A DNA stretch of 64,000 bases from Tubulanus polymorphus (lineage: Eukaryota; Animalia; Nemertea). Shown one piece after another: positions 33,401 to 39,400 of this stretch (its first letter is position 1; each line of letters starts with the position of its first letter). Location of the stretch: NCBI RefSeq assembly GCF_964204645.1, contig NC_134030.1:8599122-8663121 (forward strand). The letters are read 5' to 3'. Under the pieces are notes generated by a model. The model did no database searches and was not told the origin of the DNA. It saw nothing but the letters and a program-made list of their open reading frames with translations. A program made the position numbers and the translations under genes.

Positions 33401-36400
33401 GGAAAGTTCAACGCATTTCAACAGAGCAGATTCCGAAGCATCACCGTTGCACTCTCTAAAATATGTAGGTGTGTACATTGTATATATTTGTTATAATTGC
33501 CTTATTAACTAGTGTCCCTATAGATTGGTAATTCCTCGATATAAGGAGTTTTCACGCAGAAAATTTTCAAATTTGGAGTAGTGTGTATGCATCACTACCA
33601 TATGCCCATTGCCATAGATTCCAGCAGACCATTATTTCAGATGTTTTGTAAGGAAATTTAATACACAACCATAACTTAGTTTCTAATTTGGTAACGCCCT
33701 AATTGGGAGAAAAAATTCCAGGTCCCACATTGTATCGATTTACTAACATTCCTGAACTACTCGAACACTAATAGAGAGTAAACTAAACTACGAAGAACAA
33801 ACCTTTTCAATACGGGCACGCCTTCCTGTCCAACCTTGAAACTAGCTCGATTACACAACATAGCAATACGCGCAAGGGCATTCCAGCTCTGGTTATCTTT
33901 GTCATAAGTAGCATCTGAAATGTAAGGTTTCCAAAATGTTAACTGCACTGTTTTCTGAATTAACGACAATCAGCACCGAAACGAGCGACATTTCTAACTG
34001 GATACGTACTGGACTGGTCGTCGCTTGTGTCGGCTTCAACGATCCTGTTATCGAACCACATATGAGCGACGGTCATTCGATTCTGAGTAAGCGTTCCGGT
34101 TTTGTCCGAGCAAATTGTCGACGTCGACCCAAGAGTTTCCACAGCTTCCAAGTTCTTCACCAAACAATTCTTCGATGCCATACGTTTAGCCGTCAATGTC
34201 AAGCAGACCTTAAATCAAAAACGTTTATATACAATTACCAAGCCTATATCGCGTGTTATTGGATTTCAGTCCACAGTTGATAATAACTATTAGTTATCAT
34301 CCACAGATCCAAGATACATAAGTCTAATGACTGATGCCATTCAATGACCATAACAATGATTAAAAGGATAAGCCCACATGATACTCAAGACCTTGAATTG
34401 ACCCACTCCCATTTCAAAACTTTTCAGGGCCGCTATGAATTCGCAATCATATTTTAAGCTAATTATGAATGTCAAAAACTTACAGTAACAGTAGCCAGCA
34501 GACCTTCGGGCACGTTAGCGACGATGATACCGATCAAGAAGATGACGGCATCGAGCCAATAATAGCCGAGGATGAAAGCGATGACGAAAAATGAAACTCC
34601 GAGGAACACGGCCACGCCGGTGATAATGTGAATGAAATGCGCAATTTCTCGCGCGATCGGGGTTTCTCCCATTTCAAGACCGGATGCCAAGTTAGCGATA
34701 CGTCCCATGACAGTTTTGTCACCAGTCTTGACAACAATACCCGTACATGTTCCTGCAAGACAAAATACGAAAAAAATTTCCTCATTTACTCGCCGATAAG
34801 CATACAATGGACATGTAGAAGAAATTGAGGAATAAATCTGCCACTAAAATTCATCGCTACTGAAAAAGAGATGAAAATCAATGACACGAAAAATCGAGTC
34901 TCACCTTCAACAGCGTTCGTCGAGAAGAATGCCAAATTCCTCGTCTCCAGCGGATTCTCATTCGTGAAGTCCGGCGTACGGACCTGCGGTTCGGACTCTC
35001 CGGTCAACGACGAGTTGTCGACTTTAAAACTACTGGCACTTATAACGCGAATATCGGCCGGCACGCGGTCGCCGAATTTCACCTCGATGATGTCACCGAC
35101 GACAAGGTCTTCGGCGCGGATGTTTATTTTTTCTCCGTTTCGAATCACCAGGGCGAACTGAAACGCCGAGAAAATTGAAGCCATTGAGCAATTGAGAATC
35201 TCACCGCTCGGTTTAATGAATGACGAATATCTTTAATTATAAACAATTTAAGTTATTGAGCAACGACCATGTACAATACACAACAGCTAGCGAATCGGTC
35301 AAATTCAATAGATATAACGGACAAGAAGCGCACAGCAAGCACGACAACAGTTTTATAGAGCAGAGCCATGAATAGCAATTTTTCTATCTATCATCGATAT
35401 ATGGATCATTTCTAGAATCATATATATTTTCATTTGGGGAATACAAAGTGGAATAGGAGCCATGTTGAAAATGCTGAGCTATTAAATCATAGCTTCGATC
35501 GCATATTTATCCTATTTGCTACTTGAAAAAGTTATGCCGAACAACAGATGCACGCGATACTTTTTTATGCAAATCAACAAGGCCACACATTATATGCATT
35601 AAAAATACTTGAAATACTGATAAGTTTGAACAGTGGCATAATGGGAACCGATGGCAACGGTTCCATAGCCTCGTGCGTAGGCAGATGCACACGTAGCAAT
35701 GAATCATAGTATAGAGGTGCATGCACAGAATGTTTGACAGCCATTCAATTGATTTCAATAATCATAAGGAAATATCAATTCTATAACTACTAGAGATGTC
35801 GAGCGGTCTGCGACGAGAGGAAGAGAACCTGAAAAAAATGTCCGGTCCATCCGGCTGACACTCTTCACAAATGGCTTCTCGAAAAGCCTGTACTAGACGA
35901 TTTGCCCTACCTGCGGTACCATCGATTTGAACGATTCCATGATTTTAGAACTCTTAGCTTCTTGATAGTACGAAAAGCAACCCGTGACAACAACTACAGC
36001 CGTTAAAACAATACCTAGATAAAGCTGAAAAAAGCAACAAGAGGCGACGGAATAAAAATCAAACGTATGTATATATTAACAGAGTTACACCATCTAAGGG
36101 TTAGCCGCTAATGATGCATAAATTCGAGACAAGATCACCCATTTCCGCGAAAAAAAAACCAACCATACATGTAAGATCTAATGAACGGAAGTCTCATAGT
36201 GCTAGTGAAGGAAGGTAGTAAGTGATTTTGACCGGTAATGAACTAGATGTTTGGGTCTCGCAACAACTATTAAGTGTATACGGGATACGACCGTGAATGA
36301 GACTTCTTAAAAAATCTTAACACGCTTGATCGGCTTAAGATTTTACAAAAGAGAGATAGATTCAATTTTTAGCTTGCCCCAATTTCGAGGCGTGAAGCAC

Positions 36401-39400
36401 CTGAAAACGTGTGTCTATCTGCTCCCCGTCGCGCTAGAAGAGGTCGATTATATAAATGATATGAAGAGATATTCATGCACCATGCTGCCGCACAAATAAT
36501 GAGCTAATAAGCATGGATTTGGGTGATCAGCAGTCCCTGGCAAGCACGGTGACATCATCATTGCCCGCTCGCTTTATTACGTACTTGCGGTACCATGTCT
36601 TTAAACGACTCCATTATGCGCGAGCTTTTAGCCTCTTGATAATAAGAGAAACAGCCCGTGACGACCACCACGGCCGTCAACACGATACCTAAGTATAGCT
36701 GTAACGTGAATTATATTCATTTATTACGAGAACCCTTCACTTGTGACCTTGGACGTCTCAGTGTTCTCCATAACAGGTTTTAGAGGGATGGCCACCTTTG
36801 TCATTTTTTTATATCCGCCCCTCTGAAAGTCACCCACCCTTAAAAAATATCTGCTGCGCCTACCACAGCAGATATCAATATTCTACCAATGCTGATAATT
36901 GCTTCGAAATATGTAAAAATGTGTAAAATTGAAGACAACACCGAAGTTATGCGTCAATTTTCTGAAGTTTTTTTTTTTTGGGGGGGGGCGGGGGGATTGA
37001 AAGTCTTGTTACTTCAGCAGCTACTATGTCAGAAACAATGATTGCAGTTCCTTTAAAATTTAAGTTTTAAAATCTAATAGTTCCAAAGTTGTCGGTGTAT
37101 ATCTTAATTTATCTGACATTTTTGGGGTGTTTTCCGTTTTCAGCATTCTGGTTACAACTTGACATACATGTTCATGCCAACTTGACTCCATATCTCTCTG
37201 CTTGACCCTAATTTAACGTAACTGACACATTCAGATATCATTCCAAATGATTAAAACTTACTTTTCAGACATGCATAAAATTAATAACCTTTAGACACTA
37301 CGTAACTAATTTCACTTTATCACTGATAGATATCATATCATATTCTATTTAGTTCATAAGATTAAGATTAACAGTGATGATAAATTATTTATATGCAGAA
37401 ACATATTCAATCTAAAAATATTGTGATGTTTTCCATGCAAAATGGTAGGATATAGTGTCTTATCTGACTAAGCAAACGGCACCACGGTGGCAGCCATTGA
37501 CTTAATTATTCAGTTCAATTCGCCCACAACCACAATTATCATCAATCCCTGAATATATCTTTTTATTCAGCATACCAGTTTGATAGATAGTTAAATTGAA
37601 TCAAGTTTCAGAAAAATACACATTATCTGGTATCATAACAAGTAATTTTTGGAATATGTAAATCAGACAGATTTTGCCTTCACTTGGCAACGCCATTTTT
37701 GGACAAATTATTAGTTCCTTGCAGCCCAAGGTACGTCATCACACAAGACAACAATCTGCAGATGTTGTATCTAAACTGAGTATCAACCTGTTTCAGAATG
37801 TTGTGAATGCAGCTGTCACTATCTATTTTCATTTTCATTCCCCCCACTTCCATTTTAATTGATACAGGGTCTGTGGCATAGGGTCAACTCATTCCGCTAC
37901 AGCGCTCACAATAGACCAAAATCTGGATGAATCAGTACAAATGAACCGTATGGATTTTCCTAAAAAGAAGTTTAGACATTGTATTTGTAGCGTTTTCTCG
38001 AGAGATTATTGAATAATACTTACATTGTCGCCTGCCGGGTCGTCGCTAGTGCTAGCTTGAATTGAATAAGCTATAAAACACAGAATGGCACCTATCCACA
38101 GTAGTAAACTGAAACCGCCAAATAACTGTTTACAAAACTTCACCCATTCGGGCGTTGTTTTCGGAGGTGTAAGTTGATTTGGACCATCGCGTTCATAGAT
38201 TTCCTTCGCTTTCTCCGGAGTCAACCCCTGCCAAAACGAAACACAAACAATTTATCCATCATTTTGACAAAAAAATTATCAATCGATTTATCTTTGTAAC
38301 AATTAGCTGCATACCATTTTTGGATCGCTAACACCAGTCATGGCATATAATTCTTCAAGGGGTATCCTGTGTTCATCCTAAATTAAAAAATTCAAAAAAA
38401 AATTTCATCTCAGTGTCAATCCAACAAACTGGTTCATTCGGATTTCTTAATTTAAGGAGTTTTTTCGTACCATTTCCAACTCCTGTTTGAGGGAGTCCAT
38501 CTTCTGTTTTTTCTCATCATTGGACTTCTTCCCAAAAAACCTCTTCTTCTTACCACCCGCTGCAGACTTGTCATTTTCGTTGACCGCAAAGCGGTAGCTA
38601 TCTTCACGGGGCTATAGGAAATTAGCAATAACTGTCATTAGTCTAAAGGTATCATGAATGCTATTACAGGCATGTTGGACCTAGAATTTCTAACCATTAA
38701 AATCATTATTTTCCAAAGATATTATTACGTACATTTTCCAATGTTATTTTCCACAAGAAAGGTGAGGAAAAGGTTAAGTTAATGACTTGCAATTCCATAG
38801 GCATGAACATGTTGGCTTTTATTTAGTGGCAAATAATAATAATTAACTATGTTTCTATAAAGTCTATTCATTCGTTATAAAATCTTAATTAACTCTTCTG
38901 ATTTATAATAGAAGATATATCATAAACCAGTAATTCTAATGCTTATCATGTCTGATTAATACTTCCAGTGTTAGAGAAGTGAATTACCACCCCCAACCAA
39001 TCAATAATAATCTATTTATTCCCGAATCCCGGCAACCATTTATTATACTACATCTATTTAACAAGGCAAATCGCAATTAGATTTTACCTATCTCAAGAAT
39101 AATCAGCATAGGAAATACATAAATGCGAACATGTAAGAAGTTTGCGAGGTACACATTTTCGACCAACGAATATCTTAACATTAAATACAACACGTGAAAA
39201 TGGCCGATCCACACACACCGACCGGGCGCCATGTTGAAAATCAACTTTGCAAAAATTTCCACGACTTCATAGCGATAATTATCTAGATTTCCACATCGGA
39301 GCATCCAGATTTCGACATCTAAATTTACAGCGAATATTCACCGACAAATCGAACGCAAATTCGATGCGATTAATCGCGTTTAAACGCTATTTTTTACGCA

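What the first reader, a model, noticed from the sequence alone, without database searches (positions are those of the whole stretch)
35911..36698. Duplicated, apparently mutually exclusive TM2 exon in Na+/K+-ATPase alpha
Seen: two 114-nt phase-0 exons with intact splice sites. By my codon-by-codon count they differ at 23 synonymous codons but only 2 residues ([14 protein letters not shown] versus [14 protein letters not shown]), indicating an old duplication with both copies under purifying selection. Known: this segment is TM2 plus the M2-actuator linker; vertebrate pumps read [14 protein letters not shown], and the Drosophila Atpalpha mutually exclusive cluster lies in a more C-terminal region. 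Inference: a splice switch that tunes pump kinetics or regulation; Ser versus Asp could act as phosphosite versus fixed phosphomimic.
Basis: partly seen in the sequence, partly recalled or inferred. Interest (0 to 1): 0.8.

Follow-up and report, generated by a model that had tools for sequence, protein, structure and literature searches.

The report
Alternative TM2 exons in sodium pump
The single sodium-pump gene of the ribbon worm Tubulanus polymorphus carries two tandem copies of one exon, and transcripts use either copy but not both in what could be seen; this is real and already in RefSeq, and it is the smallest case of an apparently undescribed exon array also found in other worms and in arthropods.

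Summary
Two 114-nt phase-0 exons lie on the minus strand (36698-36585 and 36024-35911), each with AG/GT splice sites. They differ at 29 nt: 23 synonymous codons and 2 residues (R/K, D/S).

The gene is the only Na+/K+-ATPase alpha gene of Tubulanus polymorphus. Spliced contigs of one public run contain exon4-A-exon6 and exon4-B-exon6. No A-B joint was seen. RefSeq isoforms X2 and X1 differ only at residues 174 and 181. Mutually exclusive use is therefore supported, and it is already annotated.

The hydrophobic helix part of the exon is identical in both copies. Only the cytosolic M2 extension differs.

The Ser/Asp phospho-switch idea has no comparative support.

New context found here:
- The same exon is arrayed in Lineus longissimus (6 intact copies) and Capitella teleta (4 intact copies plus a relic).
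- Unidentified annelid-like contigs carry 2-3 copies, and Pancrustacea carry 2.
- It is single in Priapulus, Aplysia, Watersipora and many worm contigs.

The arthropod cluster described in the literature is a different exon (M6-M7 loop). No paper describing the TM2 array was found.

Whether the arrays are ancient or recurrent is unresolved. What enforces exclusivity is also unknown.

The parts
30474..38611 (-). Coding part of the Na+/K+-ATPase alpha gene of Tubulanus polymorphus, as far as tblastn sees it. Every segment is single-copy in the window except TM2.
   Evidence: tblastn of the natural full-length ORF of the relative's mRNA contig L078 and of RefSeq P0162/P0271. Pfam Cation_ATPase_N, E1-E2_ATPase, Hydrolase and Cation_ATPase_C on single exons. 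The CSDKTGT phosphorylation motif is in ORF 33960-34202.
38024..38227 (-). Upstream constitutive exon, 204 nt (TM1 plus the extracellular loop, ending ...AGDN). Its donor is AAT|gtaagt.
   Evidence: Spliced contig pieces and joints; sequence; translation.
36699..38023 (-). Intron of 1325 nt between the upstream exon and exon A. It contains a repeated element at about 36757-36990.
   Evidence: Joints. Depth in run X1 is 306-460 there against about 42 elsewhere.
36585..36698 (-). TM2 exon copy A (...[14 protein letters not shown]), which is RefSeq isoform X2 (R174, D181). The polypyrimidine tract before its AG is weak; its donor is CAA|gtacgt.
   Evidence: Contig record 17 of run X4 joins 8 nt of the upstream exon to A and A to 35157. 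P0162.
36025..36584 (-). Intron of 560 nt between the two copies, with GT..AG ends. It is too long for steric exclusion.
35911..36024 (-). TM2 exon copy B (...[14 protein letters not shown]), which is RefSeq isoform X1 (K174, S181). Its polypyrimidine tract is strong; its donor is CAG|gtaggg.
   Evidence: Contig record 18 of run X4 joins 38024 to 36024 and 35911 to 35157. P0271.
35158..35910 (-). Intron of 753 nt between exon B and the downstream exon.
   Evidence: Joints; sequence.
34905..35157 (-). Downstream constitutive exon, 253 nt ([10 protein letters not shown]..., the start of the actuator domain).
   Evidence: Joints 35157/36585, 35157/35911 and 34751/34904 with cut +1; sequence; Pfam E1-E2_ATPase.

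Best explanation
This is a pair of mutually exclusive exons, made by tandem duplication of the 114-nt TM2 exon, in the single Na+/K+-ATPase alpha gene of the palaeonemertean Tubulanus polymorphus.

How it works: each mRNA takes copy A or copy B between the 204-nt upstream exon and the 253-nt downstream exon. This gives two 1039-residue pumps with the same hydrophobic helix part. They differ only at two residues of the polar cytosolic extension of M2 that leads to the actuator domain. The pairs are R174/D181 versus K174/S181, which correspond to positions 149 and 156 of pig alpha1.

Shown: the exons, their constraint, both junction sets, and the two annotated isoforms.

Inferred:
- The two linker variants shift the E1/E2 poise or a regulatory contact of the pump, in a tissue- or state-specific way.
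- In an animal with one alpha gene, they stand in for the paralogous isoforms of vertebrates.
- Exclusivity is kept by splice-site competition and trans-acting factors (weak acceptor tract for A, strong for B), or by undetected RNA pairing. It is not kept by reading frame, intron length or spliceosome type.

Wider context: the pair is the smallest member of a TM2-exon array found in other nemerteans, in annelids and in Pancrustacea.
For: Exons and selection:
- Exact exon anatomy.
- Purifying selection, P = 3e-13.

Gene identity and copy number:
- Pfam on neighbouring exons.
- PDB matches at E = 4e-17 to alpha1/alpha3 residues 123-160 and 120-157.
- Only two TM2 copies and one alpha gene in the 268-Mb assembly. 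There is therefore no retrocopy that could mimic spliced contigs.

Splicing:
- Run X4 contig record 17 is upstream exon-A-35157. Record 18 is exon 3-exon 4-B-35157. No A-B joint was seen.
- RefSeq XP_074652098.1 and XP_074652097.1 differ only at residues 174 and 181, and their exons match the window.

Age:
- Exon B differs from the TM2 of a related species' mRNA (L078) at 13 nt, while exon A differs at 33 nt. The duplication is therefore older than that species split.

Arrays of the same exon with intact AG/GT:
- Lineus has 6 copies and Capitella has 4 plus a relic.
- Lineus RefSeq isoforms X1-X3 differ only in this exon.
- Pancrustacea have 2 copies, and correctly spliced RefSeq isoforms use the alternative copy.
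Against: - Expression evidence comes from assembled contigs of one run whose type is not on record. Contigs drop rare forms and give no levels, so double inclusion, double skipping and tissue specificity are untested.
- The two isoforms differ by only a conservative K/R change and one S/D change. A functional difference is not shown and may be small.
- No enforcing mechanism was found. 114 nt is a multiple of 3, the middle intron is 560 nt, and all donors are U2-type. Intron-intron complementarity is no better than shuffled controls.
Confidence: 0.85

Rival explanations
1. The two isoforms are functionally equivalent at the protein level. On this view the pair is a retained remnant of a larger ancestral array. 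Exon choice then reflects splicing-factor context, or some coupling to expression control, rather than pump tuning.
For: - The hydrophobic helix part is identical and only K/R and S/D differ.
- Tubulanus has the smallest array. Lineus has six copies that differ within the helix.
- The variable position 34 is free to vary among animals: N, S, D, T, K, H.
Against: - Both copies have stayed intact through saturated synonymous divergence.
- The K and S of copy B are kept in the related species L078.
- Position 27 switches between K and non-K (R, A or S) within arrays of Tubulanus, Lineus, Capitella, one annelid-like locus and Pancrustacea. This hints at a recurrent functional contrast.
Confidence: 0.15
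2. Ser181 of isoform B is a regulated phosphorylation site and Asp181 of isoform A is its constitutive mimic.
For: Only the S/D contrast itself at codon 34. S or T is common at this position in annelid-like arrays.
Against: - No other array pairs S or T with D. Lineus copies carry N or K, Capitella N or S, and Pancrustacea N, S or H.
- The D version (with R at position 27) is the only TM2 exon of single-copy loci in a Meretrix clam and in L004 and L005.
- The local context (K at -1, no basic residue at -3 or -2) is not a classical PKA/PKC motif. This point rests on my own knowledge.
Confidence: 0.05
3. One copy is splicing noise or on its way to loss, or the two copies are not strictly exclusive.
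For: Contigs cannot show levels or absence. Exon A has a poor polypyrimidine tract. A decayed copy exists in Capitella, so copies can die.
Against: - Of 25 changed codons, 23 are synonymous, with no stop or frameshift and intact AG/GT.
- Exon A sits in an 8.6-kb contig that continues through the downstream exons laid here.
- RefSeq models both isoforms.
- Double inclusion would insert a second membrane helix, and skipping would delete TM2. Either product would be mis-folded (inference).
Confidence: 0.05

Closest known systems
Arthropod Na+/K+-ATPase alpha (Drosophila Atpalpha, barnacle NAK1) mutually exclusive exon cluster
   Same: It is the same gene family and the same device: tandem copies of one small exon used one at a time. 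Two to four copies are reported in Drosophila, Daphnia, Anopheles, Ixodes and Balanus (PMC3793950).
   Different: It is a different exon. It is 28 residues long (VPAISLAYE...DKL, the M6-M7 cytoplasmic loop), as seen in read-through gene models at about residues 830-960. That exon is single in the window. The TM2 pair is not mentioned in that paper or in any other found.
TM2-exon arrays of other protostomes
   Same: It is the same 114-nt phase-0 exon between the same flanking exons.
- Lineus longissimus has 6 intact copies, and its RefSeq X1-X3 differ only there.
- Capitella teleta has 4 intact copies plus 1 decayed.
- Unidentified annelid-like contigs have 2-3 copies.
- Dragonfly, mayfly, thrips, stick insects, isopod and lobster have 2 copies.
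- Thrips and Schistocerca RefSeq isoforms use the alternative copy.
   Different: Tubulanus has only two copies, and they differ only in the cytosolic linker. Lineus copies differ mainly inside the helix. Orthology between arrays is unresolved.
Vertebrate ATP1A1-ATP1A4 paralogues
   Same: The TM2 exon is homologous (38 of 38 residues alignable, E = 4e-17). From memory, the vertebrate exon sizes also match (204 and 114 nt). In both cases isoform diversity of the pump is the outcome.
   Different: Vertebrates get isoforms from whole-gene duplicates, each with one TM2 exon reading ...SSKIM(E/D)SFKNMVPQ. Tubulanus has one gene and gets two isoforms by exon choice. Gastropods, unionid clams, Dimorphilus and Helobdella have adjacent whole-gene duplicates instead.
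Docking-site/selector mutually exclusive splicing (Dscam1, 14-3-3 xi)
   Same: It is a tandem array of homologous exons with in-frame length. Frame and NMD therefore cannot enforce exclusivity, which is the situation where competing RNA pairings are used in insects (my own knowledge).
   Different: No docking or selector pairing was detectable. Inverted repeats of 12-14 nt occur at chance level, and the array-wide complementarity scan does not exceed shuffles.

Membership tests
Mutually exclusive exons from tandem exon duplication | Adjacent exons of equal length and phase with clear sequence homology | tested here: met
   Both are 114 nt and phase 0. They share 85 of 114 nt and 36 of 38 residues.
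Mutually exclusive exons from tandem exon duplication | Both copies have intact splice sites and open frames | tested here: met
   The AG acceptor and GT donor are present at both copies, and neither has a stop.
Mutually exclusive exons from tandem exon duplication | Transcripts carry exactly one copy | tested here: met
   Run X4 contigs show exon4-A-exon6 and exon4-B-exon6, and no A-B joint is listed. RefSeq X1 and X2 have equal length and differ only at residues 174 and 181. Rare double inclusion or skipping cannot be excluded from contigs.
Mutually exclusive exons from tandem exon duplication | A known enforcing mechanism: frame/NMD, steric hindrance, U2/U12 incompatibility or competing RNA pairing | tested here: inconclusive
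   Three mechanisms do not apply. The frame is kept whether both copies or neither are included (114 = 3 x 38). The middle intron is 560 nt. The donors gtaagt, gtacgt and gtaggg are all U2-type. RNA pairing shows no signal above chance, but the test has low power.
Na+/K+-ATPase alpha subunit (P2C-type ATPase) | P-type ATPase domain set and phosphorylation motif, with closest solved relatives being Na,K-ATPase alpha | tested here: met
   Pfam PF00690, PF00122, PF00702 and PF00689 on separate exons. CSDKTGT is in ORF 33960-34202. PDB best hits are alpha3 and alpha1 at E = 4e-17, ahead of H,K-ATPase at 6e-10. RefSeq names the T. polymorphus protein accordingly.
Arthropod Atpalpha M6-M7-loop exon cluster | Tandem copies of the 28-residue VPAISLAYE...DKL exon | tested here: not met
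   That segment matches once in the window. Copies are seen only in arthropod models. The window's duplication is of another exon.

The most novel reading that the evidence does not exclude
The TM2-exon array may be an ancient protostome device, predating the split of Lophotrochozoa and Ecdysozoa. On this reading it was kept for over half a billion years in nemerteans, polychaetes and Pancrustacea and lost repeatedly elsewhere. It would serve as the invertebrate alternative to alpha-gene paralogues. The recurrent contrast at exon position 27 would be the conserved functional switch in the M2-to-actuator linker. That position carries K in one copy and R, A or S in another, in Tubulanus, Lineus, Capitella, one annelid-like locus and Pancrustacea.
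Probability: 0.25. Interest if true: 0.65.

Novelty: new member of a known kind. Interest (0 to 1): 0.45.

Why it matters
The sodium pump is one of the best-studied membrane enzymes. Its isoform diversity is usually explained by gene duplication.

Here an animal with a single alpha gene makes two pumps by choosing between two copies of the exon for TM2 and the linker to the actuator domain. The same exon is arrayed up to six-fold in other worms and two-fold in many arthropods.

That points to M2 and its cytosolic extension as a preferred place for natural tuning of the pump. It also offers ready-made natural variants for electrophysiology: two residues in Tubulanus, and helix residues in Lineus.

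For this window alone the finding is modest. The pair is real but already modelled by RefSeq, and the two proteins differ by only two residues.

Tried and rejected
Exclusivity mechanism:
- Docking/selector RNA pairing was not found. The repeat finder on 35100-38100 gave only 12-24-nt imperfect arms. My own rough estimate is that this is about what chance gives.
- An array-wide scan asked for 11 or more of 12 complementary bases between the first or last intron and all other introns. It was run on Tubulanus, Lineus, Capitella and L012 and did not exceed shuffled controls. The test has little power.
- Two earlier scripts timed out.
- Unrestricted RNAduplex gave meaningless whole-intron duplexes.

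Age and orthology:
- The ML tree of 35 exon copies (114 nt) is mostly unresolved.
- AU tests cannot reject that the Tubulanus copies, the Lineus copies, or all nemertean copies each form one clade (p = 0.43, 0.50, 0.18). Ancient versus recurrent duplication stays open.

Literature:
- Eight completed searches found no description of alternative TM2 exons (plus the reading). Two further searches failed on syntax.
- Palladino 2003 is not held.

Other steps that led nowhere:
- Read-through gene models of Myotis davidii, Acipenser ruthenus and Centruroides contain two TM2 stretches. I did not count them as arrays, because the copies are identical or belong to larger duplicated or fused segments.
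- A blastp self-comparison for internal repeats returned nothing and was replaced by a window scan.
- The look-up of the chiton protein P0186 found no locus.
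Full report
**1. Observation**

On the minus strand there are two 114-nt exons, A (36698-36585) and B (36024-35911).
- Each is preceded by AG and followed by GT, and each is open in frame 1.
13 codons are identical, 23 differ synonymously, and 2 are non-synonymous (codon 27 R/K, codon 34 D/S), for 29 nt differences in all.
- NG86 dN is 0.059, and dS is saturated and cannot be computed.
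- About 23% of random single changes would be synonymous. Finding 23 or more of 25 changed codons synonymous then has P = 3e-13.
The upstream exon ends at 38024 before gtaagt, and the downstream exon starts at 35157 after tttcag.
- A relaxed tblastn finds no third or decayed copy between them.

**2. What gene this is**

- Neighbouring exons carry Cation_ATPase_N, E1-E2_ATPase, Hydrolase and Cation_ATPase_C. ORF 33960-34202 carries CSDKTGT.
- Exon B matches solved Na,K-ATPase alpha chains over all 38 residues at E = 4e-17. The matched ranges are human alpha3 120-157 and pig alpha1 123-160. H,K-ATPases score 6e-10.
I confirmed this. RefSeq proteins of Tubulanus polymorphus match the window, at 100% in three alignments that stay within one exon. 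The peptides across the exon 4, TM2 and exon 6 junctions also agree.
- The coding part lies at about 38611-30474 on the minus strand.
- Exons 4, 5 and the fused 6/7 are 204, 114 and 253 nt. From memory, these are the sizes of human ATP1A1 exons 4, 5 and 6+7.
- The 268-Mb assembly holds only these two TM2 copies and a single match to the next exon's peptide. There is therefore one alpha gene and no retrocopy.

**3. Splicing**

- No listed run is on record as RNA. However, run X4 (2014) consists of spliced contigs.
- Record 17 (8598 nt) carries 8 nt of the upstream exon, then exon A, then 35157 onwards. It skips B.
- Record 18 (460 nt) carries exon 3, exon 4, exon B and 24 nt from 35157. It skips A.
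- No contig joins A to B. The genome has no processed copy, so these contigs derive from RNA.
- Independently, RefSeq holds isoform X2 (XP_074652098.1, copy A) and X1 (XP_074652097.1, copy B). Both are 1039 residues and differ only at residues 174 (R/K) and 181 (D/S).
- Mutually exclusive use is therefore supported, and it is already in public annotation.
- Limits: contigs give neither levels nor absence of rare forms, and tissue specificity could not be tested.

**4. What could enforce exclusivity**

- Frame cannot, because 114 is 3 x 38.
- Steric hindrance cannot, because the middle intron is 560 nt.
- All three donors (gtaagt, gtacgt, gtaggg) are U2-type.
- The acceptor of A follows a purine-rich stretch, whereas B has a long pyrimidine tract. 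This fits a default exon B and a regulated exon A, but that is inference.
- Searches for docking/selector-like intron pairing gave nothing above chance, and searches were uninformative.
- The mechanism stays open.

**5. What differs in the protein**

- Exon positions 1-20 are hydrophobic and identical in both copies.
- Both differences lie in the polar second half, which is the cytosolic extension of M2 leading into the actuator domain. They correspond to pig alpha1 positions 149 and 156, by the offsets.
- The phospho-switch idea is not echoed elsewhere:
  - A related species' mRNA (L078) keeps K and S.
  - Lineus copies carry N or K at position 34, Capitella N or S, annelid-like arrays S, T or N, and arthropods N, S or H.
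  - The R...D form is the sole TM2 exon of a Meretrix gene (L003; run identified through PMC12229300) and of L004 and L005.
- Position 27 is more suggestive. It alternates between K and R, A or S within arrays of Tubulanus, Lineus, Capitella, locus L007 and Pancrustacea.

**6. Breadth**

- A search of 1.84 billion representatives with the exon found 581 matches. Three of the best 150 have two matched stretches.
- Fetching loci showed arrays of the same exon between the same flanking exons:

| Source | TM2 copies | Notes |
|---|---|---|
| Lineus longissimus (L088) | 6 intact | One intron between copies is only 94 nt. RefSeq X1-X3 differ only in this exon. |
| Capitella teleta (L089) | 4 intact + 1 decayed | |
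| Unidentified annelid-like metagenome contigs (L006, L007 = L072, L012, L013, L067) | 2-3 | |

- In Pancrustacea, read-through gene models of Ladona, Ephemera, Frankliniella, Timema, Armadillidium and Homarus contain two adjacent copies (...EAKSSAIM... then ...E(S/N/A)KS..IM...).
- Correctly spliced RefSeq isoforms of Thrips palmi, Frankliniella occidentalis and Schistocerca use the SSA copy.
- The exon is single in Priapulus, the bryozoan Watersipora and Aplysia. It is also single in many JGI metagenome contigs where both flanking exons are seen. I believe these come from gutless-oligochaete hosts, but this is unverified.
- Gastropods, unionids, Dimorphilus and Helobdella instead have adjacent whole-gene duplicates.

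**7. Age**

- Exon B differs from the L078 TM2 at 13 nt, and exon A differs at 33 nt. The duplication therefore predates that species split.
- The 114-nt tree is mostly unresolved.
- AU tests cannot reject lineage-specific origins (p = 0.43, 0.50, 0.18).
- Ancient or recurrent origin cannot be told with these data.

**8. Known comparisons and literature**

- The described arthropod cluster (PMC3793950, citing Palladino 2003) is a 28-residue exon of the M6-M7 loop. It is seen in 3-4 copies in read-through models and is single here.
- The completed literature searches found no description of alternative TM2 exons. The library is open-access only, so this is not proof of absence.

**9. Procedure notes**

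The window was searched exon by exon, by reference.
- Full-length searches used the natural ORF of mRNA contig L078 and database proteins.
Vertebrate and human hits in the result lists were not followed.

**10. Verdict**

The functional reading is untested, and its phospho-switch detail is unsupported. The pair is already in RefSeq. What is new here is that it belongs to a wider TM2-exon array in protostome sodium pumps, which appears to be undescribed.

Noticed in passing
window 41137-41655: A near-perfect hexanucleotide microsatellite, (AGTAGC) x 86.5 at 99% matches. It reads as a 214-aa poly-serine ORF. It lies between exon-like ORFs of the neighbouring TPR gene, so it is probably intronic.
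   Followed up: partly
window 39928-46089 (+); L088:1-689; L090:1-880: A multi-exon TPR-repeat gene lies head-to-head with the pump gene. From memory it looks TOM70-like, with an N-terminal membrane anchor followed by TPR_1/TPR_2 hits. A TPR gene sits in the same place and orientation next to the pump gene in Lineus and in Priapulus. This suggests old microsynteny.
   Followed up: partly
window 36757-36990: Part of the intron upstream of exon A has 7-10 times the depth of its surroundings in run X1, and many contigs break there. It is a dispersed repeat or mobile-element fragment.
   Followed up: no
L090:16863-16982 and 17643-17762: In Priapulus caudatus the next-but-one pump exon ([12 protein letters not shown]...FFSTNAVE) is present twice in tandem with 2-3 residue differences. 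This is a candidate alternative-exon pair at yet another position of the same gene.
   Followed up: no
L089:2456-2569: A decayed fifth TM2 copy lies in Capitella teleta upstream of the four intact ones. It has stops and no AG/GT, so array members can die.
   Followed up: partly
L088:15495-22602: Lineus longissimus has six intact TM2 copies, but the RefSeq cluster read here shows only three isoforms, using copies 2, 3 and 4. Copies 1, 5 and 6 may be unannotated or unused.
   Followed up: partly
proteins P0277-P0292, P0298, P0299: Gastropods (Bradybaena, Physella, Biomphalaria, Bulinus), unionid clams (Potamilus), Dimorphilus and Helobdella carry two or more adjacent whole pump genes on one contig. 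Aplysia, the only gastropod locus read, has a single TM2 exon. Gene duplication and exon arrays may be alternative routes to pump isoforms.
   Followed up: no
window 41740-42021 (-): A 93-aa ORF (...QRRVTRMVPRLQNLSYEQRLKQLQLPTL...) resembles the C-terminal tail of non-LTR retrotransposon reverse transcriptases. This is a resemblance from memory only. It probably lies in an intron of the TPR gene.
   Followed up: no
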